DNA of 64,000 nucleotides, from positions 383,764 to 447,763 of the IMG/VR virus record IMGVR_UViG_3300009545_000018; one strand, written 5' to 3'. Position numbers and translations under genes: made by a program. Of the stretch, positions 34,896 to 64,000 are shown in pieces (the first letter of the stretch is position 1; each line of letters starts with the position of its first letter). The notes below the pieces were generated by a model. That model saw only the letters and a list, made by a program, of their open reading frames with translations. It did not search any database and was not told where the DNA came from.

Positions 34896-35135
34896 TTAAA
34901 ATAGTTTCCTAATGAATTTAATTAAATTACTACCTGCTGAGTAAACAGCTAATTTTAATTCTTTTTTTCCAGCTAATTTGTGTTTAACTCCTACTGGGGA
35001 GTGATGTTTATATAATTCAGCTGCTTGCTCTGGTGTTTCTGCTAAAACTCTATAAGTAACAGTGGCTGGTAGCATACATTCAACTTTTACATCAAAATAG
35101 AACTTTTGGGGAGGTTGTAATTTATCTTGTTTCAT
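34896..35135 (-). CDS. Hypothetical protein
   Basis: 79 aa ORF coupled to its neighbours. Confidence 0.6.
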   Translation of the reverse strand: MKQDKLQPPQKFYFDVKVECMLPATVTYRVLAETPEQAAELYKHHSPVGVKHKLAGKKELKLAVYSAGSNLIKFIRKLF

Positions 35136-36697: not shown

Positions 36698-36698
36698 T

Positions 36699-41600: not shown

Positions 41601-42676
41601 ATACATATCAAAAAATAATGGCTTGTGAAGATAAATTTCAAGCTATCCAAAAAATTATCTCAATAGATGAATTTACAAGAAGACTTTCAGAAATTGATCA
41701 TATTTGTAACGATCCTACTACATGGAATGATCATAAAGCTGCCGCACGTATCATGAAAGAACGGCAAAAAATATCTGATGTAATAAGTAAATATACTTAC
41801 TTTAAAAATTGGGTTCTCTTTTTTAAAGAGATAGTAAATGAACTTCCAGAAGAAATACAATCGTTTAGCCAAGAATCTTCTACTCTGCTATCAGAATTGT
41901 CTGCATTTGAGATTAGTCAGATTTTTAAAGAAGAGTCTGATGATTTGCCTGCTATCCTCTCTATCAATGCCGGGGCTGGTGGTTTAGAGGCAGCAAATTG
42001 GGTTACTATGCTCTTACGTATGTATGCTAGATATGCCAGTAATAATAATTTCAAAGTAGAAATTTTAGACACCAAACCATCTGAAGAGCATAGTTCTATT
42101 TGTACTGATTCAGTATCTATTAGAATAGAAGGTACTTATGCTTATGGTTTTTTTAAAAGTGAGTCTGGTGTACATAGGTTAATACGTAACTCTCCATTTA
42201 GTTCAAATGATACTAGACATACATCCTTTGCTGCCGTGTCTGTTATGCCAGATATAGAAGACACTATTGATATTAATATTTTAGATAAGGATTTAGAAAT
42301 AACTGCAATGCGGGCGGGCGGTAGTGGAGGACAACATCAAAATAAAACTAATAGTGCCGTTAGATTAAAACACTTGCCAACAGGGATTAATATTGCTGTT
42401 AGAGGTGAGAGAGATTATCATCAAAATAAAAGAACAGCTATGAAGATGTTGAAAGCTAAATTATATGAAATTGAGTTAAAGAAGCAACAAGAAGAAAAGA
42501 ATAAACATTTAGATGCTATGCAAGATGTAGCTTTTGGTTCTCAAATAAGAACTTATACTATGAGTCCCACTCAAATAGTAAAAGATCATAGAACAGATTT
42601 TGAATGTAATAATACTAATAATGTTTTAGATGGAGAAATTGATGATTTTATTAGTGCCTATTTGCATATGATGTAA
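41597..42676 (+). CDS. prfB: Peptide chain release factor 2 (no internal frameshift)
   Basis: AGAGGxEA, ESGVHRLIRNSPF (SPF specificity motif), RHTSF, GGQ, FGSQIRTY. Confidence 0.93.
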   Translation: MNTYQKIMACEDKFQAIQKIISIDEFTRRLSEIDHICNDPTTWNDHKAAARIMKERQKISDVISKYTYFKNWVLFFKEIVNELPEEIQSFSQESSTLLSELSAFEISQIFKEESDDLPAILSINAGAGGLEAANWVTMLLRMYARYASNNNFKVEILDTKPSEEHSSICTDSVSIRIEGTYAYGFFKSESGVHRLIRNSPFSSNDTRHTSFAAVSVMPDIEDTIDINILDKDLEITAMRAGGSGGQHQNKTNSAVRLKHLPTGINIAVRGERDYHQNKRTAMKMLKAKLYEIELKKQQEEKNKHLDAMQDVAFGSQIRTYTMSPTQIVKDHRTDFECNNTNNVLDGEIDDFISAYLHMM

Positions 42677-46600: not shown

Positions 46601-47589
46601 ATAATAAATATACTTTTATAGTCGAAGAGCCCCGCCAAATAATAAAAATTAATTTAGATAAAATTGAATATTGTGAAATTATGGAAATTATAGATAGATA
46701 TATGAAAATGTTGGTTTTTTCATGAATTGTCCCATTTGTCAGCTATCTATGACACTTATTAAAATAAATAATAAAGATGAAAGATTTCGCTGTGAATCAA
46801 ATAAGCAACATTATTGTGTTTATTATTTAAATGGACTTACTTGGTGGGTGCAACATAATAACATGGAAATTGAATATGATCATCTATTTGGTTGTAGTTT
46901 AATTGTAAATGATGAATCAGGTATAGAACACTATTACAGAATAGATTATAATGTGTCTTTTCAAGATGCACCAAAACTTTTAAAATTGAAAGCTTTTTTA
47001 TGAATTGTCCAGTTTGTAATCAACCTATGATTTATGTAAAAGAAGATGAAGGTGGTCCGCAAACCTTTAATAGAAATAAATGTAACTATCGTCCTGACCA
47101 TGATACTAGGCATTATGATGATGGTGCCTGGTTTACAAAATTAAATAATATTCAAATAGGACATAATCTAGATGATCCTAATCTTTCCAACTTCTATGTA
47201 AGAATAATTGGCGAACATGAAACCTCCTTTTTAAATATTGATGCAATATCTTTTGAAGATAGTTATAATTATCTTATTAAATTTTCGAAATTGAAAGCCT
47301 TTCTATGAATTGCCCCATCTGTAACCATCAAATGGAAGAAAGATATAAATATTTAGCTCCCACAGGAATTTTCTTTAGATGTATCCAATTCTCACAACAG
47401 CATGATACCGTTTTTATTAACGAAAAAGAATGGACCGTTAGATATAACAGTATCATTTTGTTTACAATAAATAGTTTGTTTTATTTAAAATTTTCCACCA
47501 ATAGTCAAAGCATTAATATTCCCAATATTCCTTTTAATGAATCTTTTAAATGTATACAAAAATATCTTAAATTACAAAGCTTTACATGA
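43680..47589 (+). CDS. Tandem run of 12 small Zn-ribbon genes (starts 43680, ~44033, ~44416, 44799, 45176, 45493, 45798, 46118, 46447, 46722, 47000, 47305)
   Basis: M-x(0-2)-CPxC or related N-terminus, downstream C..H, variable beta middle, K-hydrophobic-x-x-F-x tail; ATGA/TAATG overlaps. Confidence 0.8.
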
Positions 47590-47642
47590 TCTGCCCCTTT
47601 AATATTCTGCAACGTTATATTAATTTATCAGCTTTCTTATGA
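47586..47642 (+). pseudogene. Mini-gene MICPFNILQRYINLSAFL (deleted array member)
   Basis: Keeps the family N-terminus and tail; ATGA overlaps on both sides. Confidence 0.6.
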
Positions 47643-48009
47643 TTATTCTTTATACTTTTCTCTTGTCTTTAATATTAGCAGCTTGGCTTACAGCTACCCC
47701 CAAATTACAGCTAATCCCAACTAAACATCTTCTTATATGTCCATTTTGTCTAAAACAATTGGATAAGTATGCTGTTATGTTTAGAGACTGTAATAATTTC
47801 CCTCCCCTGGAAAAATTAATCATGCTTTCTCTATGTTTGCAGAAAATTTCTATCTGATTGTTTATGCTGATGTTACTATTAAATTAGAAAAATATTATAA
47901 TTCATATTTTATCACAATCAATGATAAAATATTTACAATCCCTCCCTTCCAAGTGTGTAATAGTTTAGAGGTAATGCATAAATATTTAAAATTATTGCCC
48001 TTTTCTTAA
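47639..48009 (+). pseudogene. Frameshifted Zn-ribbon array member with N-terminal hydrophobic segment
   Basis: The CPFC frame stops at 47857; the -1 frame from TTTCCCTCCCCTGG continues to ...HKYLKLLPFS stop. Confidence 0.6.
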
Positions 48010-48053
48010 CAACATACAATATCTCGATCGCAACTTCCCTCGCGCATAAAATT

Positions 48054-49291
48054 ATGAAATGTCCCCTCTGTTATGATAGCTGTCAAACTCTCTATTCTAA
48101 TGAATTTAGATGTACTAAGTTTGATCATAGTTTCGTTTTTTCTCATCATGATTGGGCTCTCTATCATATACCATCGGATATAATTACTACAACTTATGGG
48201 CTATCGTATTATACCAGTAATAATATTATCTCCTTTGAAACGCTAAAATCCCCTGATGCTGCTATTAAAATTTTGTTAAAATTCTTAAAAATATCCGCCT
48301 TTGCCTAAAATGAATTGTCCCATTTGTCAAGCTAAACTTATAAAATATCTAAGAATCCATTAGAAGAATTGTCTTGCTATAAAATGAAAATTATCCCGTT
48401 TTCAGAGTGTTATCAAACGTTACAACGCTATATCAAGATGTCTGCCTTCCTATGAAAATTTGTCCCGTTTGTCATCAGCCACTAATAAAAGAAAAATTAG
48501 GTAGTCCCATATTTACTTCTTATTATTGTACCGAATTTGGTCATGTTGCTTCTTGGTCTTCTTCTAACAGTTGGTCATTATACTGCTATGTTAATGATTA
48601 TTTATATGCTATTATCGGCTCGGAAGATAAATGTAGTTTTATCACCTTTACTGATAATACAACAAAAGTAACAACAACGAATATTTATACTTCTTTTGAA
48701 GAGTCTTATCTGTCTATCCAACGAATGGTTAAATTATTAACTTTTATTTAAAATGAATTGCCCCCACTGTAATATAATGTGTTCTAAATCTGATCATACT
48801 TATGATTGTTTTAAAGATTTTAAACATACTTTTATCTTTTCTAACAAAAACTCTTGGTGGCTTATTATTAAATATGATAGTCTAATAGAATATCGTTTGG
48901 AAATTCATAATTCTCTTCCTACTTTTTATGTCTTTGCTAATCCTCCCTTTTCTATAGTCTTTGAATATGTAATACATGAACCCGTAATAGCAGCAAATGC
49001 TAAATCTATAATAGAAAAATATATTAATCATTATAATAAAATGAAAGCCTTTATATGAAAGAATTACCTGTTAAAAATGATAGTTATTTCTATAATGATA
49101 ATAATTGGTCTGTTTATTATGTTTTCTGTAATAAATATAAGGTAAGAATTTGCTGCATCTTAGAAAAATGTTATGTCCATATGTTGAATGAACAATACGT
49201 AACGGTAAAATGTATGCCAATTAATTCTTTAAAGTTTGATGATGCAGATTCTTTTGTTAATAGATATTTTAATTTAATGGCTTTTTATTAA
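48054..49291 (+). CDS. Last array genes (48054-48308, 48452-48751, 48753-49058, 49055-49291) plus remnant 48310-48455
   Basis: CPxC starts (absent in the last gene); tails KISAFA, KLLTFI, KMKAFI, NLMAFY; remnant ends KMSAFL. Confidence 0.75.
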
Positions 49292-49904
49292 AATATAATG
49301 TCATAGGATGCTGTCAAAGGGAGCAAAGTGTTAGAAAGTGGGAGGGTGTGGGAAGATAGCTGAATTAATGTCTTTTAATGTTTTGGCTGTCATTTGGGGT
49401 GGAATAGGATAGAAAGAGAAGATAAGTTATACTTTGATTTAGAAGGTTTAAGGAGGAAAGTAAGATTTTGGATTGGTTTGAACTGTATTATAGAGCTTAT
49501 AGATGGTTTGATGTGTTTAAAATAGCTGTAGACCGGGTCCCCAGCCGCCTCGGACCGTCAAACTCCCCACCTTTTCACTGCTGCTACAATACAGGGTTTG
49601 GCATACTCTCTGCATTATTCAATTAACATACCAATTATTCTTTTATAAGTCTTATTAATTAATTATACTTACATTACAATCATTTAATAAACATTATTAA
49701 TCATTTATGGCATCTTTCTTGCTTTCGCTGTTATTTTGCCTCACTGAACAGCTTTTCAGCCCTTTTAGTAGTCTTGGTACAGTAACTGCAAGATGCAAAG
49801 CCTATACCATGCCATAGCAGTCATTCCAGTTACACTGCACTTACCCATCTTTTAACGGTTAGTACCTGATTAATGTAGCGGGTAGCTGAGATAAGGAGAT
49901 TACT

Positions 49905-50096
49905 ATGGCACAATTCAAGATTTTGTCTCAAGTCAATGGTTCTTGGTTGGAGCAGGGGAAAGATCTCGGCGGTACTACTGTTATGAATCAAGCTGCTCAA
50001 TTGGAAAAGCAGGGATTGAATGTTCGAGTTTTCCGAACTGATATTCCCAAGTTCATTTATGAAACGGGAGCAGGATACCACGGAATCTGGTACTGA
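49905..50096 (+). CDS. First small gene of the motif block
   Basis: AAGGAG SD; follows motif 49844; ends before a terminator. Confidence 0.75.
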   Translation: MAQFKILSQVNGSWLEQGKDLGGTTVMNQAAQLEKQGLNVRVFRTDIPKFIYETGAGYHGIWY

Positions 50097-50102
50097 AAGA
50101 AT

Positions 50103-50130
50103 AAAGGAGCCTAAGGCTCCTTTTCTTTTT
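50103..50130 (+). terminator. Intrinsic terminator
   Basis: AAAGGAGCC-TAA-GGCTCCTTT with T tract. Confidence 0.85.
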
Positions 50131-50244
50131 ATCTTTGTGGTATAGGATTTGCTTATTGCAATTAATATACCAAGACTTTTTAGATAAAAGAGCTCTACCC
50201 ATCCTATAACGGAATCAAAGCAGCTATTGTAAGGTAGGTATCAT

Positions 50245-50616
50245 ATGGAATTCACCTATGAGAATGATGAAGGGGAAGACATTACAGTCACCTTCCCTAG
50301 TGTTAAGGTAGTTTGCCCAAGGTGTAAAGGGCACGGAACCCACCTTCACAATGATATTGGTAGCTATGCTTACAGCGTAGAAGAATTCCAAGATTCCTTT
50401 GATGAAGAAGAACAGGCAGAGTATTTTCGCCATGGTGGAAGATATGACGTTCTCTGCGAACGCTGTCACGGTAAAAACGTGGTGGATGAGATTGACGAAG
50501 AGAAGTGTCAGCAGGATCCGGCTTTGACAGAAGCCTGGCAAGCTTTTTGTCAGAAAGAAAAGGATGATGCTGATTATGAAAGACTCTGTGAATCAGAGCG
50601 GCGCTTTGGTTGCTGA
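50245..50616 (+). CDS. Acidic protein with CxxCxGxG Zn finger
   Basis: CPRCKGHG...CERCHGK. Confidence 0.75.
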   Translation: MEFTYENDEGEDITVTFPSVKVVCPRCKGHGTHLHNDIGSYAYSVEEFQDSFDEEEQAEYFRHGGRYDVLCERCHGKNVVDEIDEEKCQQDPALTEAWQAFCQKEKDDADYERLCESERRFGC

Positions 50617-50653
50617 TTGAGATCCCATCCTATAACGGATTACTGCTAATAGT

Positions 50654-53199
50654 ATGACAACCCTGCAGAATCTCAAGAAGCGTGACTTGTCTTTTGCTTA
50701 CCAGATTGCAGTGGCAGACTGGAAAAAACTTTCTGCTATGTGTTCTGGGCAGTCAGCTGACGATCTGGCTAATGGCTTTCATGGTAAGTCATTGGCTGGA
50801 GTGCTGTTTGATTCGGAATTGGCAGTGGATCAGATTGCAGCTAAGCTGGATCGGTTGAATCCTTAAGGGATTGAAAGGGAGGTTTACCTCCCTTTCTTTT
50901 TAATTGATGCTGGTATGCCGTTTGCATATTGCAATGTTCGAGCCAACCGTCATAAAGTTTGCTTTAAACTTGTTCCCATCTGATAACGGATAGATCCTAA
51001 TAGTATAGTTTTTCTGAGGGTTCTGACTAAAAGTAAAACCCTCCCCCTTTACGTTGCAAACAGTAACTGTAGTAGGCAATAAGCTTCCAGTTATATTGTA
51101 ACAAAGTTTGGCGGTATCTTAAAACCGCCACATTTTTTAATCCCATCATTTAACGGAAAGGTCTAAGTAATATGAATACTCTTTTTAAGTTGGTTGTTGT
51201 GATGTTGGCATTGTTTGCCGTGACTTTCTTGATTCAAACCTATGCCAATTCTTGGTTTCATCAAGTGGCATTCACGGCTCCTATCATTGGAACCATGAGC
51301 TATGCAGCTTGTACCATTGTGGCAGTAGGTTGTGTGTTGCTGTCAAAGCTGCATTGGGGCAAGTAATGTTAGGTTTCGTGGTGTTTTGCCTGGTAGGTTT
51401 TTTTACTGGGCATTGGGTAGTGGGTGGTATTATTGGAATTGTAGTATACGCCCTAAATAAGTAACTCCCATCAATAAACGGTTGAATGTTATTGATATGA
51501 CATATCATCCCAGTTACCGAGCAGTAGATTCTGTTGGTACTGAATGTGAAACTTTTGAACATGAGTATCAAGCGGTAGACTATTGGACTGGTGCTCCTAC
51601 TGGAATTGATATTCAATATTGGAATGGTTCTGAATGGGAAGAATATAATCCTAGGACTTTCACTAAAGATTAATTCCCATCAATTAACGGATTGTACCTA
51701 GTTATTGAGATGCAAAACCTAAAAGACCGATTGGAAAAGTTAGCAGATTCTTTTAAGGGTACTACCAATTCTTTTGGTAGGTTTACCGTCACCAATGTAG
51801 GTTGCGGGATTCTGAGAGTTGATGGTGAAGGTGTGCAGTATACTCCCGATGTAATATTGGGTTTTCTCAATCGACACGGCATTAAGTAATTCCCATCAAT
51901 AAACGGATTAGATCTATTAGAAAGGATAAAAAAGATGAAAGCATTCAATTGTTATATTGTCAAGCGCAAGGGCAAAGTCATCAAGGGTGAGAGTCGCAAG
52001 CTGCGCAATGCAGCCAAGCGACAACGTCAAGGTCGCTAAACCAAAAGAATGAGAGCTTAATTGTTCTCATTCTTTTTTAATTGGTCTTGGCATATGCTTT
52101 GCAACTTGCAATAAGCTTGCCAGGCGTTATATTTTTATATCCCATCTATTAACGGAAAGACATACTAAGTGGAGGCTGGTAATGTTCATTAAGATTAAAG
52201 CTTTGTTCAAGCTGTATGATCTGGGAATCATTAGCAGCGAACGTTTATCCGAAGCCTTGGTAAAGCTCTCCCCATCTGATAACGGATAAAGATTATTAAT
52301 TATGAATACTCTAGAATTCAGCCGAGCTTGCCGAACAGAGTTTGCTGCTTTGCCGGAAGCCTATCGTAATGACGATGTCTTGGAATTCTGGTTTGAGGGT
52401 GGGCTTTGGTATTGCCGCCCCAAACTATCAGAAGTAACAATTCTAGGAAACTGGGAATGTTATTATAGTGATGGTGTATGGGAGAATCAAGAAGCCCATC
52501 TTTAAACGGATGATAGGAGTCTAATATGAAAGCCAGGACTCAGTATCTGATTAATGTTTATGTCACGTTGAATAGTGCTGGTCGTAAGGATCAATTCCGC
52601 CGGGGTCGTTACAATGACCCGGAACACTCTGCCATAGCTTGGGGTGGGGTTCATGGTCCTCTTTTGGGCTGCGAACCTTCCGCTGAGGAATTGCAAGAAT
52701 TGGTAACAGAGGGTTACATTACAGTTAAGTCCAATGGCGCTGTAACTCCTACAGCTAAAGCTAAGGCGGCTAGGACTGGAAGCTTAGGCAGTATTAGTCC
52801 TTAATACCAATGAATAGTTTAGAGCCTAAAGAGACAGAAGATCAACGCAGAGCCCGATTAGCATCAAGAGAAGATCTAGCGTGTTTAGAGTGCCACCATA
52901 GGGTTTGCTTATACTTTTGCTCTAAGAGAGTTAAAAAGCGTCCCATCAAGTAACGGATTAGTGTATCTAATATGAAGTACCTAGATGAAAAGTCTGTTAC
53001 TGCAGTGCGTCGAACTAAGCCTCTAGCAGTTAGGACTAGGTCAGGATATGGGAGTAAACTTCCAACTGATATTATGCTGCAATTGAATAAGCGTTGGTAT
53101 CGGGTCTATGTGATGATCTATTCTAATGCTGGTTCGGCATATATCTTGCAAAAGGGAGAAAAGGTTTTGCTTGGGTCCTATGATCCTCAACCCATCTAA
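50654..53199 (+). CDS. Small motif-associated genes: 50654-50866, 51172-51366, 51366-51464, 51497-51673, 51710-51889, 51935-52039, 52182-52289, 52302-52505, 52526-52804, 52810-52953, 52972-53199
   Basis: Each starts just after a motif or is coupled to the previous gene; products unknown (two are hydrophobic). Confidence 0.65.
50873..50901 (+). terminator. Intrinsic terminator
   Basis: GAAAGGGAGG/CCTCCCTTTC with T tract. Confidence 0.85.
51005..51138 (+). ncRNA. Candidate small structured RNA
   Basis: ORF-free unit between motif 50975 and a terminator; stems GAGGGTT/AACCCTC, GTTGCAA/TTGTAAC, TAACTG/CAGTTA. Confidence 0.5.
51109..51138 (+). terminator. Intrinsic terminator
   Basis: TGGCGGT/ACCGCCA with T tract. 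Confidence 0.75.
52043..52078 (+). terminator. Intrinsic terminator
   Basis: AAAAGAATGAGAGC/GTTCTCATTCTTTT. Confidence 0.8.
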
Positions 53200-53210
53200 T
53201 AACGGATTCC

Positions 53211-53241
53211 AGGGGAGCTGTAATGGCTCCCTTTTCTTTTT
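53211..53241 (+). terminator. Intrinsic terminator
   Basis: GGGAGCT/GGCTCCC with T tract. Confidence 0.8.
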
Positions 53242-53330
53242 GGTGGGGTGGCAAGGCTTTTGCATATTGCAAGGCTCGTGCCACGCCCCAATAACAACCC
53301 ATCTATTAACGGATTAATAGGTATTATGTA

Positions 53331-53446
53331 TCCGATTGGTTGGCACCTTTTTAGTTAGTAGTGAAACATAATTCATTAGCTTTCACTGGCAATTAATGAA
53401 TTATGTTCTGACTAAAACTAAGGTTCGATTCCTTAGAGTCGGGCTA
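53331..53446 (+). ncRNA. tRNA-like RNA with greatly extended central arm
   Basis: CCGATT/AGTCGG acceptor-like stem, TAAGG-TTCGATT-CCTTA T-arm, long central stem. Confidence 0.55.
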
Positions 53447-53479
53447 ATTCCCATCTAATAACGGTAGAATATAATTAAT

Positions 53480-56400
53480 ATGAATCGCACTAAGCAAAAC
53501 CTAGATTCTGCTAAGATGCTGGTTGCTAAAGCTCTGGCTATTCTGGCGCAAGCTGGTTTGGCTCAACGATAGAGAAGACAATGAAAAAGCCCAATCAAGA
53601 ATTGTTTCGGCTGCTTCGTTTTGCCATTCGTTTTCCAGGCTGGCACTCTTACGATTCCAGTGTAGCTAAACATATCAAAAGGGCAGCTGCATTGGAATTT
53701 CTGGAAGTTGATACCAAAACCAAACAATTCCGATTGATGCCAAGTCAATGGGCGGAAGACTTTCGCAAAGGTCCCATCGTTTAACGGTTGAGGGTATCTA
53801 ATATGAATCTCAATAAAAGAATCAAGCTGGATCGTTCCTTCGAACTAGCAGAAGATTCTGCTAAGCCTGATATTACTGGAACCATTGTGGGCTTGGGACA
53901 TATTGTCGGCATAACAGTTTATATCGTGGAACTGGATCAAGGTTTCTATTCGCCAGATAGGCGAATCTATATTAGCAGAATGGTAGTAGCAAGGGAAAGC
54001 CTTCGTCCCATCGAATAACGGGTGAAGGTAACTAACTGGGGACTGAAACCCGAGCTGACCGAAAGGAAAAGCTCCATATAGTATTACTGGATGAGATCCT
54101 AATCCGGGTTGTAAAAGAATAACGGTTGGTACCGTTTACAATCATGTCGAAAGACCTTAGGCTGGCGAAGTAAGTCCCCATCATTTAACGGCGGAAGATT
54201 AATAACATGAGGAAAAACGCTCAAAAGGTTCTGCAAGCTTTCAATGCTGGGCAGGCTGCTAATGAGAAAACCATTAGCACCAATGGTAAGGAATTGTTTT
54301 CCTACGCCATGTTGATCGCCCGCAAGAATGGCGATAAGGTAGAGCTTATCGATTATAGTAAAGCTCCCAGCAACACTACCCGCAGTCAGGTTAACGCAGT
54401 GCGGCAATTCTTTCCTGCTAGTCAGATTGTGGTAGTGGAGAGTTTCTAAAAACAAGTTTTCCTAAAACTTGTTCCCATCCTTTAACGGAATAAGGCTCTT
54501 ACCATGAGAGTTGGTCCTGCTACACTATCCTACTTGAAACGTTTGGGCGATGAGGAAGCTGCTTTGATGTTGAAAGCCGGTTCATTGGTTTTCAGTCAAG
54601 CTCAAAAAGCAGGTTTGACGCCGGGTTTCTTTTTCATTCAAGGGCAACTGAGAATGGTGCCAGTACCCAAAACCTTTGCAGTGAGTCCCATCTTCTAACG
54701 GAAGGATCCTTCTAATATGGAAGAGTTAATGGATCGAGCCCGGGAATGGGTCAATGAGAATTATCCTCACTTGGAAGGCGATGACTATTCCGCCAAGCTA
54801 GAAGAGACACTATGGGATCTGGCGGAGATTGATGGCACGGATCCTATTAACTATCTGACTTATTATAATTAATTACACTAAAGCAATAATTGAGGTTTAA
54901 TGATTCGAGCCCCGCCGAGCTAGGCGTCTCTAATGTTTAATAATAGTTGATTGAATTTATAAGATTACAGTTTGAGAGGAATGGGGAGAAGGCGACCTTC
55001 TCCCCATTCCAATGTTATACATTGGTATAGGCTTTGCATCTTGCAATCCTTATACCAACCTTGCTATTATCTTTCCCATCCAATAACGGAAGCATTCAAT
55101 TAGATATGACAATTAGTTATCACAAGCGAGACTTGCAACATGCCCAAAAGATTGCAGAAGCAGAAAAGTACCATATCCTGAGTTTCAGTGACGGTGCAAA
55201 CTCCGCGGAGCATCTAGTTCGGGTAGTAGAACTGGAAAACGATCTTCGTCGTATCTCTCAACAATTGAATCCCATCAAGTAACGGCTAGAGACATAATAT
55301 AAGAAACATGGCAAAGTCAAACAAGTACTGTAGGGATTGTGAGTGTTATCATCCGGCAGGCGATTGTAATGGTAATGATCGTCGGCAAGATCATAAGAAG
55401 CGAGAAAAGGTCAAGCAAGCCGAAAGCCCCATGTTCTTCTATGATCAAGATCCAATGTTGATGGATCCATAAAAACCTGTTCCCATCTGATAACAGTTAA
55501 TGTAAGTGGTTGTATCATTGAACGCGGCGTAAAAGACTATAATTAATAAGGTTCACGCGGGAAAAAGATAGTCTTTCCACTTTTCCATCTAATAACGGCT
55601 CCTAGATACTAATTGAAAGAATAAAGACAATGTTTTATGTAACCAAGAATGACGCGCAATACATCATGGCTGCCCTGCTGATTCCGACCCTGCTGGGCTT
55701 TTACTCTCTCTGCCTTTACTTCTAAAAACTTAATAGGCAGTTTAGAATAGCTGCCTATCTTTCTTCCGGTTTAGCTCAGTTGGCAGGGAAACATTAATGA
55801 CAGCTAATTGGTTGCATAATGTTTCCCATCCATTAACGGTTGAAGGTGTCTAATATGACTTGGAATAAAGAACAGATTAGGATTGCCATTCAAACCCGTG
55901 ATGTTGTGGTAGAGCGTGCCATTGTTGCTATCTATCAACGTCAGACACTAGACGAACAATCCTCAGAAGAAACCAAGCATTCTAATGGAGTTGGTTTTAG
56001 TGGGGCGCATGCACGTTTGGGCACGTATTATGCCAAGTGGATTCTTCAGGGACGTCACTTAACCGGAAACCATCTAGTCAAAGCTCGTGCCATGGCATTG
56101 CATTACGTAGGACAATTAGAGCAGATTGCTGCACAAGTTTAATTCAAACTTGTTCCCATCTATTAACGGATTGATATTACTAATATGGATTACCTAACTC
56201 GTAACATTCAAGACACTGGTAGCAAAACGGTTTTGATGCCAGCCAGCCACGTTCGTGGGAGCACCATTATCTTTTGGACTTGCTGTGTGTTCTGGACCAT
56301 TGCCGCCATTGCTTATCACAGCATGCACTGAACCAAGATGCATATCTTCCTGTTAGTCATTATGGCATACTGTCATGTCTCCTGGGAATCTACCGATAGG

Positions 56401-57052
56401 GGACAGCCTGTTTATGATGCTAACGGGTATAACTACAGTGACAATGTTATCTCCTGTCATATCGATCCCATTGAGGATAATATAACAGAACAACGTCACC
56501 ATATTACTTGCTGGGGCACTGATAAGCAGGTAGTGGTAGATCGGTCCTTGCATTGTGATAAGCAGCAGATTGAAGATTACATTGAAGTGCAAAGCTTATT
56601 CTTAGGCTGTAAGTATCACTGAATGTTAGGCATTATTCTTGCCGCTGTAATTCCGATAGTAATACCAGTTATTATTAATTGTTTGGATTACTTCATAGAT
56701 TAAATCCCATCTGATAACGGAGAAGGGTTTGTAGGCATTATCAAGAGGGAATTTATATTACTGAACATTCCAATATGTTGGAGTTGATTAATCGTTGCAA
56801 TAAGCTTGCAACCTTACAGACAACTATTACATGGATGTATGTAGTTGTCTGAGTTTATAACGGCACTGTAATGGTGCCGTTTCTTTTATGCGCGTGTTGG
56901 TACGTGCTTTGCATATTGCAATAAGCTTGCCAACCATCCGTCAAGCCAAATTATTATCCCATCTAATAACGGAAGGATACACGTAAATGAAGCTAAAGTT
57001 AATAGGTCAAGGTACACACACTCGTAAGGGTGCCGCAATCTATGGCGACTAA
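53480..57052 (+). CDS. Small motif-associated genes: 53480-53572, 53581-53784, 53803-54018, 54207-54449, 54504-54698, 54717-54872, 55106-55282, 55308-55472, 55630-55725, 55855-56142, 56185-56331, 56338-56622, 56987-57052
   Basis: Starts re-assigned to the ATG about 15 nt after each motif where present; products unknown. Confidence 0.65.
54037..54180 (+). ncRNA. Candidate multi-stem structured RNA
   Basis: Closing stem TGGGGACT/AGTCCCCA, GAAA tetraloops, several nested stems. Confidence 0.6.
54978..55010. terminator. 15-bp perfect hairpin without a U tract
   Basis: GGAATGGGGAGAAGG-CGA-CCTTCTCCCCATTCC. Confidence 0.6.
56736..56887 (+). ncRNA. Candidate small structured RNA
   Basis: ORF-poor unit after motif 56706; GTTGCAA/TTGCAAC and CAGACAACTA/TAGTTGTCTG hairpins, then a terminator. 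Confidence 0.4.
56859..56887 (+). terminator. Intrinsic terminator
   Basis: AACGGCAC/GTGCCGTT with T tract. Confidence 0.8.
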
Positions 57053-57149
57053 TCCACATAGGTTGTTCTGATTAGAGAATAGCTTTAAAAGCTCCGAACA
57101 CTTTAGCTTCCCATCCTATAACGGTTTCATACTCTGATTGAGATACACA

Positions 57150-57518
57150 ATGAAGATCGAATGTACCACTGAGGAATTGGTAGCGCTGCAACGTACCACG
57201 GAACTGGAATCCTTGCAATATGAAGTAGTAGCATTGCGAGAACGGAATTCTTCCCTGGAAGATCGGATCGCTAACCTGAAGGATCACAACACTGACCTAC
57301 AGCGGGAATTGGTGAAGCCGGCAGCTACTATTAATGGCGCCAGTATGCAGCAAGTTTCGGATCTGTTCAAGGTATACTTGGGTGGTGCCAATAGGGAAAC
57401 CCCTATTGGAGCCCAAAAGATCGCTGCTATCAAAGCCGTTCGTGAAGTTTTCAAGTGCGGATTAAGGGAAGCCAAGTTTATCATTGAAGGTAACTTGGAA
57501 AACGAGCGATACGGCTGA
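57150..57518 (+). CDS. Coiled-coil protein with ribosomal protein bL12 (L7/L12) C-terminal-like domain
   Basis: KIAAIKAVREVFKCGLREAKFIIE matches the bL12 KIxxIKxVRxxxGxGLKEAKxxVE signature. Confidence 0.7.
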   Translation: MKIECTTEELVALQRTTELESLQYEVVALRERNSSLEDRIANLKDHNTDLQRELVKPAATINGASMQQVSDLFKVYLGGANRETPIGAQKIAAIKAVREVFKCGLREAKFIIEGNLENERYG

Positions 57519-57556
57519 ATAAACTTCCCATCCTTTAACGGTTGATTGCATTCAAT

Positions 57557-60500
57557 ATGGATCCTGAGCAATTGATTCAGCAAAGCGCGGCTTCTGGGGA
57601 AACCATCAAGATTGATTGGAATGTCAAAGTGTTTTCTCACTTGATGCGCCGGTCTCCTATTTACACCGAATATACAACCTTCACGGAATTCCAGGGTAAA
57701 GAATTGGATAAGTCCTGGTGTATCCAATTGATACATTAACCCATCCTTTAACGGTTAGAGACACCTAACATGACATTCGATAAAGGACAGCGAGTCAACA
57801 CTCCTAATGGTCTTGGTACTATTAATTACCAAAGGATGGTACCGCCCGATTACAGTGAAGCTATGATAGTTTCTGTCTTTCTGGATTCTCGCCAATTGGA
57901 TCGGGACTTGGGAAAGTATTCTGGAACTATCTTTCCGGCAGATGTTGTTACTCCCATCCAATAACGGACTACTAATAATAGTATAAGACAAATGGTAAAA
58001 ACCAACCACCATAACGAATGGTTTCGACCCGTTACCAAAACCACTTGCTCTTGCGGTCAAAAGAAAACGCAAGTTTATAGTTGGGGAGAATATGTGTGTG
58101 CCAAGTGGCGCACCATTGACTATGTGTGTCAAAACTGTTTTCCGATTGTAAGCGAACGTTTACAGCAGCATAAAAAGGAATGCGGCTGTGAATTTAAGCT
58201 AATTGGTTATCGCGGCTGTAGTTTGCCTGACTGGCTTAAAATGCCTGTGCAATCTTGCCAGTTTTCCCATCAAGTAACGGTTGAAGATGTCTAATATGAC
58301 TAAGCAACAAGCTCTGCAGGACTTTAAAGAAAACGTACTGCCGGCAGTCAAACAGCAATATCCACATGATAAGCATGCTGTTATTCAAGCTTGGAATGAT
58401 TACACTGACAGCTTGTGTAAAGACCGGCAGATTACCGCCAAGCAATACCATAACTGGTCCAATCCTTTTTGAGCCTCATGTCTAAGTGTGAACATGTATT
58501 TCCACGTGTAGCTAATTACGAGTTATTAGGCACTGGTGGCAAAAGGATTATATGGTCCTGCAATAACTGTCTTTCCATCAAGGTTCACTTCATTAATGAT
58601 GTAAAAGTTAATGATAAATGGACTACATATGAAAAAACAGTCATAGTAGACTGTTTAGATTACGATCCTGATCCCATCCAGTAACGGTTAGGTACAACCA
58701 ATATGACAACTATGTATCTAATACGCGATACCACTGGCAAGATATTGTCGAGTTGCTCTTTCAATTCCGTTGCAGCTTTATGTGAAGCAGTTAAGGTCTG
58801 GCATTATTTGGGCAACATTAGCGCCGATAGCTATGGTGTTGTAGTTATCTTTTAGTTCCCATCCTATAACGGCTAGGTACAATTAATATGAGCCAGTTAT
58901 CCGAAGCCCTAAAAAAAGTCGCTGCTATTGCATCTTCTACCTACCTAGGAGAAGAGACTGAAAAGTATAGTCAAGGCAGCGGTACTTACAAGGTTAATAA
59001 GTGGAAAGTAGAATTGTCTTTCCAGGGGCGCCGATATACTTGTCCCTTATATAAGACAGGTGAAGGTCTTCGAAAGAAAAAGTACAGCTTTAATAGCAAG
59101 CTGGGACAATGGGGTAATTTTCCCGTTGCAGGATCAAACCACCCTGATGTAGCTGACGTTATTCATTGTCTGATTACTGATACTCATTGCGGCATGATGG
59201 CATTCGACGAGTATTGCAGCGAGTTTGGACTTGATACTGATTCCCGTGCTGCTTTCAAAGTGTGGGAGCAATGCGTGGAAACTGCTGGACCTTTTAGACG
59301 GTTTCTAGGTTCGGAGTTTGATCATCTGTCAATGTTGGAACACTAATGAAAACTTACAGGCTCAAAGAAAACCATCCCACCTATCAGAAATTTCTTAAGC
59401 TATATAATCTAGCTGAGAAGTTAGGTATCTCTCTTGAATTTATTGGAGATCAATGTTTTTTGGTAGATTTTGATCTGCCTAAGATACGGTTTCAAGTGAA
59501 AGATATAGAGCCTAATCATATCTTAACTTCGTTTCCTTATCCAACGGAATTTGAGATTACATATCAGAAGCCCCATCCATAGACGGAAGTGTGTATTTAA
59601 TATGCGCAACTATCAAAGCATGATTGAGCGACGAAAAGCGGAATTCCAAGATCATTTCTCGGATGTTGGATTGTCCAAACAGTTCATTCAATATTACGAG
59701 AATGGCAAGCGTATCAAGGTGCGGTTTCCCGATGGTCGTACAGAGTGCGGTACCGTTGGAGTTACAACCGGTTGGGTCCCTTGCTTTCTGCTAATGCATC
59801 GCAGTACTGATACTGGAAGCTCTACAGTCTTGGCAGACATGGATAAGATTGTGGGCGTGCAAGTCAGTAAGAAGTACGTTACGCCGTGAATGGAAAAGGA
59901 GCATCTGCTCCTTTTCATTTTGCCCAATATGGTATGTGCTTTGCATATTGCAGCATTCGTACCACTACCTCCGGGGCAAAAAACAAACTCCCATCACATA
60001 ACGGGTTGATACTAAAGGTAAGAGATATGAAAGTTAAAGTGTTTCCCGTCAATGGCAGCTATACTATCTGTGCGGTTTTACCTAACGGCAGCATGGATCC
60101 GCATTATCCTGCTATTACGGATATTGCGCATCATGGTAATGCGCAATACATTGCGGACAGAATCAATGAGGCTTATCGGGCGGGTGAAACCAATAAAGCC
60201 ATTGAGATTCGAAAAGTCTTGGGTCTTTTATATTAATCCCATCTTCTAACGGATGAATGCAATTAATATGGCAAAACAATATCCCTGTGATGGTTTTACT
60301 CGACTCACAGAAGAATCAGACTTGGTTCCAGGTACCGTGCTTCGCATGGTTAACTTTATCGATAACCCTGCTGTTAGCGCTCCCTTTTCCGATTGTGTCA
60401 TTACTAAAGTAGAAGATGGTATTGTCTACCTGAATCGTCCCATGGGATGGTCCAATGGCAAAACTCATACAGAAGAGTTTTGTGCCTACACTACCAGGGT

Positions 60501-62428
60501 TGTCAAGTTCTGGCATACTGTACTGACCGCTAGTGGTAAGCCTTATAGTATGTTTGGGGTGTAGTTCCCATCCTGTAACGGAACCAGTATATTAATTATG
60601 GATAGATTTACAAGGTGTCTGCTACTAGGTCTATTCTTCTTTGTTCTAAACGTTCTTTTATATAAGATGTTTAGGTTGGTTTATTGGGAACGTACAGTCA
60701 TTACCTCTATAGTAGCACTTTATGTCGGTTGGTTTCATGGCAGTTGGTTTTTCAAAAAAAGAAATAAACCCATCCAGTAACGGATATTATCTTCCTATTG
60801 TAAGAAAGTAAAAGACAATGGAAATTCTTTCTCATTCTCGCAGTGTTAAGGTAGAACAATACAGCTTGTGTTTCGATTATATCGGAGCCAGCAAGCATCA
60901 TGGTTTCTCGTTTGACTGCAATGCAGCTGGAGAAGTAGATGTTGTGGCTTTGCAGAAAAAGCCGGCAGCATATGATAACTATCTGAAATGTCTGTCAGGC
61001 GAGCATAAGGTTCATGCTCCTTACGTTCAGGACTTTTCGCATCGTTATACCGAGCCGGCAGTAGGTCGGTGTGTCTGCGGCTGCAAAGTAGAATTGGCTC
61101 GTTTTACCAATACCTGCGATGGTTGCAATCGGGATTACAATTACAGCGGAGATCTTTTGGCACATAGAAGCCAATGGGGTGAGGAAACTGGGGAAAGCTA
61201 CTGTGATATTCAGGACCTGTAATGAAAAAGCGCAATCGCTGTAAGTGTAAAAAGTGTGGTACGATTATTGAATCCAAACATCGGCATGACTTTGTTTACT
61301 GTAGATGTAAGTCCATTTTCACTGATGGTGGAACTGATTACATTAGAAGGGGAGGAGATCTTTCTTTAATTGAGGAAGTTCCAGAAGATAACAACATCTC
61401 CTAACGGAATATATTATGAGTTACGAACTAAGCTTCAGTGAAACATTCTTCTTCGGCGAATGTGATCCCTACGAAACTGACATTACTGCAACACCTACCA
61501 GTGTGTATGCTGCTATCTGCTGCTGTAAGGAACTGGATCCTGACAAGTGGCAAGACATTGCAGCGGAAGTCTTTCAAGTAGAGCCGGATCTATTGACAGA
61601 GGAAGCTGTCATGAGAAAGATTCGTAAAACCGACACATGTTCTAACTTGAACGTGCCTGTACGGGTGTGGATAGATGAACAGGGTTGGTATAAACTAGAA
61701 GTGTATTGATCCCATCTGATAACGGTGGAGCATATCTAATATGAAGATTACAGCAGATCGTTTCAGTGAGCTATCTCTTTCGATTCAAGATCAAGCCACT
61801 AGTCTTTACAATAAGGCTTTTCGTTTGGGCTTTAATGCCGAGCTTGGCGCTAAAGATGGTGGCACTGAAACTGTCATTAGCATGATTACGGAACTGGAAT
61901 CTACCTTGCGGGTATTGAAACGACGCCTGCAGGAAACCCTCCCATCCTCTAACGGGTAGAGATACTTATTATGCAAGCCAGTCTTTGTGATTCAGATTGC
62001 AGTGAAAATGCTGTCATAGCAATCCTTCAAGGTGAAGGTGCTGCTAAGTTTGCCAAAGAGACATGTCAATCGCTCAATGGTAGCAACTGGGAATGTGATG
62101 GCAATGATTTTGCCTATTGTCTCACGGAAAACTGTCCAAGCTTATTGGAAGAATTCCAAAAAGACTTGGGCGATATTGAGATAAACGATTCTGAGTATAC
62201 TCCCATCACATAACGGATAATAAATATAATATGTTAACTCAAAAGGGAATGGAAATTCTGTTGAAGATGTATTCTCTACATCGCAGCAATTTCTTAGAAA
62301 CTCATGATGGTTGCAATCGGAATGATTGCGAGCGGGATTTTCTCCATAACATTCTGTCGAAAGTTTCCGGTAGTTATAACGAAATTGTCTATGCCAAGTT
62401 AGCTAACGAGATTGAAAGCATTCGATGA
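57557..62428 (+). CDS. Small motif-associated genes: 57557-57739, 57770-57964, 57992-58294, 58296-58472, ~58478-58684, 58703-58855, 58888-59346, 59346-59582, 59602-59889, 60027-60236, 60268-60564, 60598-60780, 60818-61222, 61222-61404, 61416-61709, 61741-61959, 61971-62213, 62231-62428
   Basis: Same unit architecture; several are Cys-rich Zn-binding peptides (57992, 60818, 61222). Confidence 0.7.
59893..59921 (+). terminator. Intrinsic terminator
   Basis: GAAAAGGAGC/GCTCCTTTTC then ATTTT. Confidence 0.75.
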
Positions 62429-62823
62429 AAGCTGTACTACTAGGATTGTTACTGTTAGGTTGCGGAGATCATGATAATCCTCCTCCGGAAGCCCCTAAGT
62501 TTTGCATTCAACCCGCCGCCACTTATGTAGAAAGTTTTAGTCCGGTCTATGGTAGTTGTCCAGGTTTACCATCAGTTTTGATTACCATTCCGGAAGATGG
62601 AAGTTTTCCAATCAATACGGATGAAACCTGTCATGTTAAGGTAGATGGTTGCAAGGCAGACAATACTGGGTGCGTGTATCAGAGTGACGGCTGCACTATC
62701 AAGTCTGATACCACTGTCACCTTTAAGGATGATGGTACTGCAGTAGGCTATATGACAGTATCGACAGCTAAGTGTGGATACGACTGTATGGGTATCTATG
62801 AGTTGTACTTAGTTAAGCAATAA
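62425..62823 (+). CDS. Cys-rich lipoprotein
   Basis: MKAVLLGLLLLG-C lipobox. Confidence 0.75.
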   Translation: MKAVLLGLLLLGCGDHDNPPPEAPKFCIQPAATYVESFSPVYGSCPGLPSVLITIPEDGSFPINTDETCHVKVDGCKADNTGCVYQSDGCTIKSDTTVTFKDDGTAVGYMTVSTAKCGYDCMGIYELYLVKQ

Positions 62824-62825
62824 CT

Positions 62826-63776
62826 ATGGAACTGGTAAAGTTAGGCGCTAAGCAAGGCACAGAATGCTGTACCTGTAGAAACAGGATTAAGCATAACGAG
62901 ATCTGTTATCGAAAACAACGCTTAGCCGAAACTTATCACGAACGATTACATGCTAACGGTAAAGGCATGGTTCAATGGTACCATCACAAGTCATGCATTG
63001 AAAAAATTCCCATCTGATAACGGATACCTACGAGTAATATGAGTAGCAAATGCACAGTTAAGAAAGCCAAAGAGTTGAATGCCTATGACATTAAATTCAA
63101 GCTAACGCAGGGAGAATTAATTGCATTGTACAATGCATTAAAACGATATTCCTCTGCTTCTACTGGAGGCGCGGCTGTACACGCTTATCTGTGTAATAGT
63201 TTGCAAGAGCTGTCTGTGGAACATGGCGTCAAGTTTCCCATCGACTAACGGAAGAGCTTATTTAATATGCTAAGTATGAAGGTAGAGACGGTTGTTAACG
63301 CACTAGTTACTCAATTGCTGTCAACGGATCTATATAATGAAGCAATTCATTTCCACTTGGATTGCCGGCTCAATTACTTTGAGGATGGCAAGCGTAATTA
63401 TCGAACGGCACGCGCCTTGCATTTGCTATATCAGCGTCATACGGGAAGCACCTATATCAGTGCCTTTTCTGCTGTCTTGGATAATCCATTCGATAAGATT
63501 GATAAGGTCAAAGATTGGAATCATGAATGCACTCATGACTACTGCTGGCGTAGTGTAAACTGTTTCTCTGCCGTCTATTTTTCTATGGCAGAAGATATTA
63601 ATCGTCAGTTGGTAAAAGCTGGATTGTCGGAAGTAGCACCCATTGATATGAGAGAGTTTAACTCTTTTGGTGGCATTAGCGGAAATGTTTTCCAATTGGT
63701 TCCAGTCAAGGTAGAACTGGATCCTACAGACAAGAATCATCATAGAAGGATGATAACAGTTTCTCCCATCCTTTAA
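62826..63776 (+). CDS. Three small genes (62826-63017, 63039-63248, 63267-63776)
   Basis: All end inside the next motif (IPI, FPID, SPIL). Confidence 0.7.
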
Positions 63777-63810
63777 CGGAATAGTGCTTAGATTATTACC
63801 AGGAAAGTAA

Positions 63811-64000
63811 ATGAATTATATTAAATTAAGTGTGTTGCAAACATTGGTTTTCTTGATCTGTGCAGTTGCTTGTGGGCAAACTCTGCAAACTACAAGCTTC
63901 TCCGAAGGAGGCAGTAATTCTGCCATTGGTGGCGAGTCTGGAAACCCAGCTATGCTGTCAATGTCTGGTGGAGTAGCAGAAGATCCATCTGTCGGGGGCG
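63811..64000 (+). CDS. Putative lipoprotein, 3'-truncated by window edge
   Basis: MNYIKLSVLQTLVFLICAVA-CGQ followed by a Gly/Ser-rich linker; AGGA SD. Confidence 0.6.
   Translation, partial: MNYIKLSVLQTLVFLICAVACGQTLQTTSFSEGGSNSAIGGESGNPAMLSMSGGVAEDPSVGG

What the first reader, a model, noticed from the sequence alone, without database searches (positions are those of the whole stretch)
50624..63267. ATG fixed 15 nt after the motif with no SD: a block of leaderless mRNAs
Seen: 22 motifs have an ATG exactly 15 nt downstream (e.g. 50654, 51172, 52972, 53803, 54207, 55855, 57770, 58888, 61741, 63267) and 6 more at 14 or 16 nt. These ATGs are usually preceded by TAAT and lack an SD. Where the ATG is further away (49905, 50245, 51935, 52182, 63811) a purine-rich SD-like run appears. 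The closing stem of the RNA at 54037 starts at exactly the same offset. Inference: +1 is the A of ATG, placing the boxes near -30 and -21, a geometry unlike sigma70 promoters. Leaderless messages could keep these genes translated while SD-dependent host initiation is inhibited. This also corrects several ORF-track starts (51497, 53803, 55106, 55855, 57557, 58296, 59602, 60268).
Basis: partly seen in the sequence, partly recalled or inferred. Interest (0 to 1): 0.82.

Follow-up and report, generated by a model that had tools for sequence, protein, structure and literature searches.

The report
Phage promoter box driving leaderless genes
The last 14 kb of a 448-kb uncultured phage genome holds about 50 tiny genes, most preceded at a fixed distance by one 15-base box that most likely acts as a phage-specific promoter starting the RNA on the A of the start codon; this has not been shown experimentally.

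Summary
The box CCCATC-N3-TAACGG occurs 47 times, all on the + strand between 49844 and 63779. It does not occur elsewhere in the window. In 22 cases an ATG lies exactly 15 nt after the box (about 1 expected, p~1e-24), and every one opens an ORF of 30-169 codons.

The same box forms one-strand arrays in about 35 other metagenome contigs, including a syntenic 118-kb relative. There, ATGs at +15/+16 open long ORFs in 59 of 63 cases.

The key new evidence comes from 119 sites with no ATG at that place. Their most conserved downstream position is a purine at +16 (106/119), preceded by a pyrimidine (89/119). This is a start-site signature at the place where the A of ATG otherwise sits. Four structured non-coding RNAs also begin there. 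Genes without a box are translationally coupled to the gene before them.

Best reading (0.6): a phage-specific promoter with boxes near -30 and -21 and +1 at the A of ATG, giving leaderless mRNAs. The polymerase or specificity factor is unknown.

Rivals are RNA cleavage at the same point, or a start at the box end that leaves a 15-nt leader. Sigma54-type promoters after each terminator complicate the picture. No RNA data were listed.

The parts
49844..64000 (+). Array of about 50 small + strand genes and 4-5 non-coding RNAs. It has 42% G+C against 28% upstream and runs to the end of the contig.
   Evidence: The window is the last 64 kb of a 447,763-bp contig. The junction at 49.3-49.8 kb is covered in one piece by an independent Logan contig.
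49844..63779 (+). 47 copies of the 15-nt box CCCATC-N3-TAACGG. First bases: 49844 50198 50624 50975 51142 51467 51676 51892 52141 52271 52495 52942 53191 53298 53450 53773 54007 54177 54474 54687 55075 55271 55482 55584 55825 56155 56706 56958 57110 57527 57740 57953 58266 58673 58858 59572 59990 60238 60567 60769 61393 61711 61941 62202 63009 63237 63765.
   Evidence: 40 exact, 47 with up to 2 mismatches, all on one strand; 12 near-invariant positions, plus T just before the box.
50654..63776 (+). 22 genes whose ATG lies exactly 15 nt after a box (proposed leaderless). A of ATG at: 50654 51172 51497 52972 53480 53803 54207 54504 54717 55855 56185 57557 57770 58296 58703 58888 59602 60268 61741 61971 63039 63267.
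   Evidence: All open ORFs of 30-169 codons.
52302..62428 (+). Six genes with the ATG 16 nt (52302, 52526, 55106, 60598) or 14 nt (56987, 62231) after a box. The expected leader is 0-1 nt.
49905..64000 (+). Twelve box-led genes with short leaders of 4-31 nt counted from the proposed +1. ATG at 49905 50245 51710 51935 52182 55308 55630 57150 57992 60027 60818 63811. The leaders are purine-rich and several hold a clear SD.
51366..63017 (+). Genes without a box, joined to the upstream gene by overlap or a gap of 9 nt or less (translational coupling). ATG at 51366 52810 53581 56338 58478 59346 61222 62425 62826.
51005..51135 (+). Non-coding RNA 1. The box at 50975 is followed at +15 by ATA, not ATG. 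There is no ORF, and the RNA ends at an intrinsic terminator at 51109-51130.
   Evidence: (z = -4.8).
53328..53445 (+). tRNA-like RNA after the box at 53298. It has a 7-bp acceptor-like stem from 53331, a long central hairpin, and a T-arm with GGTTCGATTCC.
   Evidence: z = -5.4. Not called by ARAGORN or Rfam.
54037..54184 (+). Structured RNA of about 148 nt. Its closing 8-bp helix begins at offset 15 after the box at 54007.
   Evidence: z = -2.5. No Rfam match.
56736..56885 (+). Non-coding RNA after the box at 56706, ending at the terminator at 56859-56881.
   Evidence: (z = -4.2).
49599..59945 (+). Ten sigma54-type -24/-12 elements (TGGYA-N6-YTGCW). First bases: 49599 49708 49775 50138 50911 52088 53249 55023 56898 59930. 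Seven of them also read as the same element on the - strand, so they are palindromic. They lie after terminators and 49-69 nt before the next box (136 and 245 nt for the first two of the opening trio).
   Evidence: In relatives, 62 occur in 119 kb against about 1 expected.
50103..56881 (+). Intrinsic terminators at 50103-50123, 50873-50896, 51109-51130, 53211-53233, 55733-55758 and 56859-56881. The terminators at 51130 and 55758 are followed by a box with no sigma54-type element in between.
   Evidence: with sequence read.

Best explanation
The box CCCATC-N3-TAACGG is the upstream part of a promoter used by a clade of large virulent phages. A polymerase or specificity factor, not yet identified and probably phage-encoded, binds the box. 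It starts RNA synthesis 15 bp (in this phage) or 16 bp (in most relatives) after the box, at a purine that follows a pyrimidine.

The two half-boxes therefore sit near -30 and -21. There is a weak AA at about -12/-11 and an initiator (TAAT|A here).

In 28 of the 47 sites the initiating A is the A of the start codon or lies within one base of it. These small genes would then be expressed from leaderless mRNAs, which ribosomes can start on without an SD.

The same promoter also drives genes with short SD-containing leaders and several structured non-coding RNAs. Genes without a box are translated by coupling to the gene before them.

Shown: the box, its spacing, its conservation, and the start-site-like signature. 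Inferred: that the signal acts on DNA, that +1 is the A of ATG, and which enzyme reads it.
For: 1. Spacing is sharp to one nucleotide: 22 ATGs at +15 against 3-4 at each neighbouring offset.

2. In the terminal small-gene array of Xanthomonas phage Xoo-sp13, which uses ordinary sigma70 promoters and leaders, the -10-to-ATG distance is spread over 25-32 nt.

3. There are 242 unique box sites in the window plus about 35 contigs, always on one strand per contig. In relatives, ATGs at +15 and +16 open ORFs of 30 codons or more in 21/21 and 38/42 cases, against 39% for random ATGs.

4. In the 119 sites without a nearby ATG, the most informative downstream position is +16. It is a purine in 106/119, and +15 is a pyrimidine in 89/119. 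AA at +4/+5 and C at +8 are also conserved.

5. Four structured RNAs without ORFs start at this offset.

6. Two terminators (51109-51130, 55733-55758) are followed directly by box-led genes with no other promoter-like element.

7. Genes lacking a box are all coupled to the upstream gene, so the box is not needed for translation as such.

8. Array proteins are unrelated to each other (mean column identity 7%). The syntenic 118-kb relative shares the box but none of the array genes. The box is therefore a conserved signal and not a by-product of gene duplication.

9. Orthologues keep the ATG at +15 although the spacer sequence differs (L049 against window 55855). The RcZahn homologue starts at the same residue.
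Against: - No transcript 5' end has been mapped; no RNA run was listed.
- No RNA polymerase or sigma-like gene was found in the window, in the array, or in the 37 kb examined of the relative.
- Sigma54-type promoters precede the array (three in tandem) and follow most terminators. The boxes may therefore lie inside longer host-made transcripts, which would allow an RNA-level role.
- The spacer is purine- and A-rich at -15..-9, and 8 of 29 sites hold an SD-like core. This would also fit a 15-nt leader.
- A pyrimidine/purine step can also mark an RNA cleavage site.
Confidence: 0.6

Rival explanations
1. RNA processing. Host RNA polymerase with sigma54 makes long transcripts from the -24/-12 promoters. 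A sequence-specific endoribonuclease, probably phage-encoded, binds the box in the RNA and cuts 15-16 nt downstream. This releases leaderless mRNAs and the non-coding RNAs, much as RNase III cuts the T7 early transcript between genes. The messages would still be leaderless.
For: - Sigma54-type elements stand before the array (three in tandem in the window, in L057 and in L016/L050) and after most terminators. Each lies 45-70 nt before the next box.
- Every box lies downstream of such an element.
- The pyrimidine/purine step at +15/+16 is also a common cleavage context.
Against: - No known ribonuclease reads 12 fixed bases of unstructured RNA and cuts at a ruler distance.
- The box has no self-complementarity (seen directly in the sequence).
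- Two terminators are followed by box-led operons without a sigma54 element.
- Sigma54 promoters need an activator ATPase, and none was seen.
Confidence: 0.13
2. The box is a promoter of the T7 type, with the start at or just after its 3' end. The mRNAs then carry a fixed 15-16-nt leader whose purine-rich 5' part helps ribosome binding. The genes are short-leadered, not leaderless.
For: - In single-subunit phage polymerase promoters the conserved block ends at the start site and is followed by a purine-rich initial sequence.
- Relatives show GAAAG, AGGAG and GTAAAG directly after the box, and A-rich positions at +4/+5.
- A at -3 fits the A-rich start contexts of bacteria that do not use SD (from my own knowledge of Flavobacterium work, not checked here).
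Against: - It does not explain the conserved pyrimidine/purine step at +15/+16 in sites with no ATG there.
- It does not explain the single-nucleotide sharpness of the spacing.
- It does not explain RNA helices that begin at +15.
- Position +1 after the box is not a conserved purine; A, C and G are each 36/119.
Confidence: 0.15
3. The box is a translation signal in the RNA. It would act as an SD substitute or a re-initiation tether read by the ribosome or by a phage factor, placed at a fixed distance from the start codon inside polycistronic messages.
For: - The distance to the ATG is fixed.
- 12 upstream ORFs stop at the TAA inside the box and 19 of 32 overlap the box or spacer, so stop and restart lie 18-21 nt apart.
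- The phage encodes IF1, RF1 and a protein with an L12 C-terminal domain.
Against: - The box also precedes four non-coding RNAs and 12 genes whose ATG lies 19-46 nt away with its own SD.
- Genes without a box are translated by plain coupling.
- Sites without an ATG keep a conserved feature at the same offset.
Confidence: 0.05

Closest known systems
Terminal arrays of small early genes in large virulent phages (T4 early genes, T5 pre-early region, and the first 20 kb of Xanthomonas jumbo phage Xoo-sp13 examined here)
   Same: Dozens of small, mostly orphan genes lie on one strand at a genome end. Many have their own strong near-consensus promoter, and intrinsic terminators sit between groups. 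Xoo-sp13 shares two distant homologues with this phage.
   Different: Those arrays use host sigma70 promoters (TTGAC-N17-19-TAnnnT in 23 of 47 Xoo-sp13 genes) and leaders of 25-32 nt. Here there is no -35/-10 pair, a different 15-nt box, and the ATG lies at the predicted start.
Leaderless mRNAs of bacteria and phages (lambda cI from PRM; many genes of Actinobacteria and Deinococcus-Thermus; Thermus phage middle and late genes)
   Same: The start codon lies at the predicted 5' end, is always ATG, and has no usable SD. PMC3160421 and PMC12340547 describe the bacterial cases.
   Different: In those cases a sigma70-type -10 box lies about 7 nt before the ATG. Here positions -12..-7 show no TAnnnT, and the conserved box lies at -30..-16. 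The jumbo phages phiKZ and AR9 have no leaderless mRNAs (PMC8244752, PMC5312081).
Promoters of phage-encoded single-subunit RNA polymerases (T7, T3, SP6, Syn5)
   Same: A long, almost invariant, asymmetric sequence is repeated before many genes of one phage and absent from host genomes. There is an A/T-rich stretch just before +1.
   Different: T7-type promoters are conserved from -17 to +6 (my own knowledge). Here the invariant part ends at -16 and -15..-1 is weakly conserved. No such polymerase gene was found in the parts examined.
Poxvirus early promoters and archaeal TATA/BRE promoters (resemblance of geometry only)
   Same: A conserved core of about 15 bp sits around -30 to -15, followed by a loosely conserved spacer and a purine start at a fixed distance. 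Archaea combine this geometry with widespread leaderless mRNAs (my own knowledge).
   Different: The sequence is different and the organisms are different. The hairpin plus T-run terminators, sigma54 elements and bacterial RF1/IF1 point to a bacterial host. No homologous factors were identified.
Sigma54 (-24/-12) promoters
   Same: The separate palindromic elements in the array match TGGCAC-N5-TTGCA on one or both strands and are about 70-fold enriched in the relatives.
   Different: The CCCATC box itself has no GG/GC pair at that spacing. Its two halves start 9 nt apart and lie further from the start.

Membership tests
Leaderless mRNA | The RNA 5' end coincides with the first base of the start codon | not testable with these tools
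   No RNA run was listed. Indirect support only: a pyrimidine/purine step at the same offset in 119 sites without an ATG.
Leaderless mRNA | The start codon is AUG and opens a real gene | tested here: met
   22/22 ATGs at +15 in the window open ORFs of 30-169 codons. In relatives, 59/63 ATGs at +15/+16 do so.
Leaderless mRNA | No functional SD at 5-9 nt before the start | tested here: met
   Positions -8..-1 are Y-W-W-n-T-A-A-T. Purine cores, where present (8/29), lie 9 nt or more from the ATG.
Sigma70-type promoter | -35 and -10 hexamers 16-18 bp apart, with the -10 hexamer at -12..-7 | tested here: not met
   Consensus scan gives 41 matches against 39.3 expected. There is no TAnnnT at -12..-7 in the site profile. 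TAATAT over the ATG is absent in relatives, which keep only the ATG.
T7-type single-subunit polymerase promoter | Contiguous conservation from about -17 to +6 | tested here: not met
   If +1 is the ATG, the invariant block lies at -30..-16. If +1 is the box end, the geometry would fit, but position +1 is not a conserved purine.
T7-type single-subunit polymerase promoter | A cognate polymerase gene in the same genome | not testable with these tools
   Only 64 of 448 kb, and 37 of 118 kb of the relative, could be read. None was found there.
Sigma54 promoter (for the CCCATC box) | GG at -24 and GC at -12, ten bases apart | tested here: not met
   The box has no such pair. The separate palindromic elements do.
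N4-type hairpin promoter | An inverted repeat forming a short hairpin at the promoter | tested here: not met
   The two half-boxes are not complementary: 3 of 6 positions, read directly from the consensus.
Bacteroidota primary promoter (-33 TTTG / -7 TAnnTTTG) | Enrichment of TAnnTTTG before genes | tested here: not met
   5 in the block against 14.9 expected, and 97 in the low-GC part against 87.7 expected.

The most novel reading that the evidence does not exclude
A clade of large soil and water phages carries a so far undescribed transcription machine: a polymerase or specificity factor, possibly delivered with the DNA. Its promoter (a bipartite box at -30/-21, no -10 element, start at a fixed 15-16 bp) is unlike every described bacterial or phage promoter class. 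It is dedicated to expressing a hypervariable, G+C-enriched terminal array of takeover genes as leaderless mRNAs, alongside host sigma54 promoters.
Probability: 0.4. Interest if true: 0.8.

Novelty: new variant of a known kind. Interest (0 to 1): 0.62.

Why it matters
If the box is a promoter, it defines a new promoter geometry and implies an unknown polymerase or specificity factor in a widespread but uncultured group of large phages.

It would also be the first phage block known to me in which dozens of early-type genes are systematically leaderless. phiKZ and AR9, the mapped jumbo phages, have no leaderless mRNAs.

In practice the box gives exact gene starts for many orphan genes. It is also a simple DNA signature for finding these phages and their accessory-gene arrays in metagenomes.

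The co-occurring sigma54-type promoters would be an unusual use of that host sigma factor by a virulent phage.

Tried and rejected
- RNA evidence: two run searches listed only the source DNA run. Read laying could therefore only confirm that the G+C junction is contiguous.
- Known RNA families: none for the box or the non-coding RNAs, at gathering or relaxed thresholds. ARAGORN calls no tRNA in the window.
- Cultured relatives: there is no DNA match in the phage collection. The box is absent from the parts examined of the 642-kb phage LR756502, Tenacibaculum phage pT24 and Xoo-sp13.
- Host or prophage search: two pattern scans of 185,579 genomes found nothing.
- Polymerase hunt: Pfam and PHROG scans of window and array proteins, and a walk over 37 kb of the 118-kb relative, gave no polymerase or sigma-like protein. 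The walk was stopped as too slow.
- TAATAT as a -10 hexamer: rejected, because relatives lack it but keep the ATG.
- ATG at +14 as a gene-start class in L051/L052: rejected, because 8 of 10 such ORFs are under 20 codons. These sites instead fit a start at the G.
- tRNA link: the box equals positions 4-18 of tRNA-Glu(UUC), which produced false hits in the scans. The variable N3 shows no pairing with downstream bases, so I treat this as coincidence.
- Literature: searches found no description of this box or of sigma54 promoters in phage early regions.
Full report
**What the window is.** The window is the last 64 kb of a 447,763-bp viral contig from a rhizosphere metagenome. A second assembly and a Logan contig of the source run agree with it, and all end at the same place.

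Bases 1-49,300 have 25-38% G+C. They encode ribonucleotide reductase, PhoH-PIN, collagen-like fibres, thymidylate synthase, GMP reductase, a release factor RF1 and an IF1 homologue.

From about 49.8 kb to the end the G+C content jumps to 42%. This part consists of about 50 small + strand genes. One contig of the source run spans the junction with even depth, so it is not an assembly chimera.

**The observation.** The motif is CCCATC-N3-TAACGG. It occurs 40 times exactly and 47 times with up to two mismatches. Every copy is on the + strand between 49844 and 63779, and none lies in the other 49.8 kb.

- Twenty-two copies have an ATG exactly 15 nt after the box, against about one expected (p about 1e-24). 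Four have one at 16 nt and three at 14 nt, one of which is spurious.
- All 22 open ORFs of 30-169 codons.
- T-A-A-T is the consensus at -4..-1.
- Where the ATG lies further off, clear SD-like runs appear.
- The helix that closes the RNA at 54037 starts at offset 15.

**Relatives.** A scan for two boxes 190-220 nt apart found 51 stretches in metagenome contigs. About fifteen are tRNA-Glu gene clusters, because the box happens to equal positions 4-18 of tRNA-Glu(UUC). The rest are arrays of up to 17 boxes in 5 kb, always on one strand, in contigs of 41-57% G+C from soil, groundwater and sea.

One relative is a 118-kb contig that is collinear with window 0.5-44.8 kb at 26-69% protein identity. 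It carries its array at the same place, again at the contig end, and again richer in G+C than the rest (0.47 against 0.37). None of the array proteins is shared.

The box is thus a conserved signal of a phage lineage, set in a hypervariable gene array. It was not found in 185,579 bacterial and archaeal genomes.

**Where the RNA starts.** Four lines of evidence bear on this.

1. The spacing is sharp to one base. In the comparable terminal array of Xanthomonas phage Xoo-sp13, which uses ordinary sigma70 promoters and leaders, the distance from the -10 box to the ATG is spread over 25-32 nt.
2. In relatives, ATGs at +15 and +16 open long ORFs in 59 of 63 cases, against 39% for random ATGs. ATGs at +14 mostly do not.
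3. Among the 119 unique sites with no ATG at +12..+19, the most informative position after the box is +16. It is a purine in 106 sites, preceded by a pyrimidine in 89. AA at +4/+5 and C at +8 are also conserved. This initiator-like step sits where the A of ATG sits in the other class, and it cannot be explained by translation. In the window the step lies at +14/+15 or +15/+16.
4. Four structured RNAs without ORFs follow boxes at the same offset. Two of them end at intrinsic terminators.

Genes that lack a box overlap or abut the gene before them, so they are translated by coupling. Twelve upstream ORFs use the TAA of the box as their stop codon.

**What it is not.**
- Sigma70-like matches are at chance level, and there is no TAnnnT at -12..-7.
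- The apparent TAATAT over the ATG is absent in relatives.
- The box has no GG/GC pair at sigma54 spacing and no inverted repeat.
- The invariant part ends at -16, unlike T7-type promoters.
- The Bacteroidota -7 motif is not enriched.

**The complication.** After most terminators, and three times in tandem before the first box, there is a second conserved element, TGGYA-N6-YTGCW. It matches the sigma54 -24/-12 consensus and is often present on both strands as a palindrome. Relatives hold 62 copies in 119 kb against about one expected, in the same positions.

If host sigma54 holoenzyme fires from these elements, the boxes also lie inside longer transcripts. That leaves room for an RNA-level role: cleavage 15-16 nt after the box, comparable to RNase III processing of the T7 early transcript.

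I rank this lower for three reasons:
- the box is unstructured;
- a cut at a ruler distance from a 12-base recognition sequence has no precedent that I know of;
- two terminators (51109-51130, 55733-55758) are followed by box-led operons with no sigma54 element.

A start at the box end, giving a 15-nt leader, would fit the purine-rich bases just after the box. It does not explain the conserved step at +15/+16 or the sharp spacing.

**Verdict.**
- The box is most likely a promoter of a new geometry: half-boxes near -30 and -21, a purine start at a fixed 15-16 bp, confidence 0.6.
- About 28 of its 47 copies in this window place the start on or next to the A of ATG, so these genes would be leaderless.
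- Taken together, a 5' end at the ATG, whether by initiation or by cleavage, has a probability of roughly 0.7.
- The enzyme that reads the box was not found in the parts of the genomes that I could read.
The rest of the genome rarely uses SD, and a quarter of the box-led genes do use SD-like leaders.
- The mapped jumbo phages phiKZ and AR9 have no leaderless mRNAs (PMC8244752, PMC5312081). Bacterial leaderless genes have a -10 box next to the ATG (PMC3160421, PMC12340547). This would therefore be a new variant of two known things, phage-specific promoters and leaderless messages.

Noticed in passing
window 49599, 49708, 49775, 50138, 50911, 52088, 53249, 55023, 56898, 59930 (16 nt each, + strand; most also on the - strand): Sigma54-type -24/-12 promoter elements, often palindromic, lie after terminators and in a tandem trio before the array. 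The same layout is found in relatives (62 in 119 kb, about 1 expected). Use of sigma54 by a virulent phage would be unusual. Their role is open: promoter, roadblock or regulator site.
   Followed up: partly
window 49300-49850; L057 14000-19123: G+C content jumps from 28% to 42% at the start of the array. The 118-kb relative shows the same step (0.37 to 0.47). The higher G+C of the array is therefore a conserved property and not a recent insertion or a chimera.
   Followed up: partly
window 64000 (contig end); L057 19123 (contig end): Three assemblies of this phage, and the contig of the relative, all end inside the array. Many relatives are short contigs made only of array. This suggests a genome terminus, a terminal repeat or strain-level hypervariability.
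   Followed up: no
window 53328-53445: A tRNA-like RNA with an acceptor-like stem, a T-arm (GGTTCGATTCC) and a very long central hairpin in place of a normal anticodon arm. It is not recognised by ARAGORN or Rfam.
   Followed up: partly
window 57150-57518: A 122-residue protein with an N-terminal coiled coil and a C-terminal domain matching ribosomal protein L7/L12 CTD (Pfam E = 3.6e-06). It could be a decoy or adaptor for translation GTPases.
   Followed up: no
window 30994-31215 (-) and 41597-42676 (+): Phage-encoded homologues of initiation factor IF1 (69% identical to the one in the 118-kb relative) and of release factor RF1.
   Followed up: partly
L017, L021, L038, L054, L056 and others: The box is identical to positions 4-18 of tRNA-Glu(UUC) (acceptor strand plus D-arm). 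A few window sites also continue with TTAGGTAC, like the tRNA. I treat this as coincidence, but it is unexplained.
   Followed up: partly
window 53191-53233: A box is followed at once by a terminator hairpin, so the predicted start lies in the hairpin loop. RNAs started here would lack the 5' arm and escape this terminator, while RNAs from upstream would stop.
   Followed up: no
window 43680-49291: A second, low-G+C run of small + strand genes with 4-nt start/stop overlaps. Several share the junction GAAAGCYTTTYT before the ATG, so they are probably a paralogue family. No CCCATC box occurs here.
   Followed up: no
window 35132-36793 (-): A deoxyribonucleoside monophosphate phosphatase gene is interrupted by a LAGLIDADG domain (likely an intein). 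The relative's ribonucleotide reductase also carries an intein with LAGLIDADG.
   Followed up: no
L065 (Xanthomonas phage Xoo-sp13) 1-20500: The first 20 kb of this cultured jumbo phage is an outward-facing array of about 47 small genes. In 23 of them a near-consensus sigma70 promoter lies 25-32 nt before the ATG, followed by an ACACACC-rich leader. The array is an architectural counterpart of the one studied here.
   Followed up: partly
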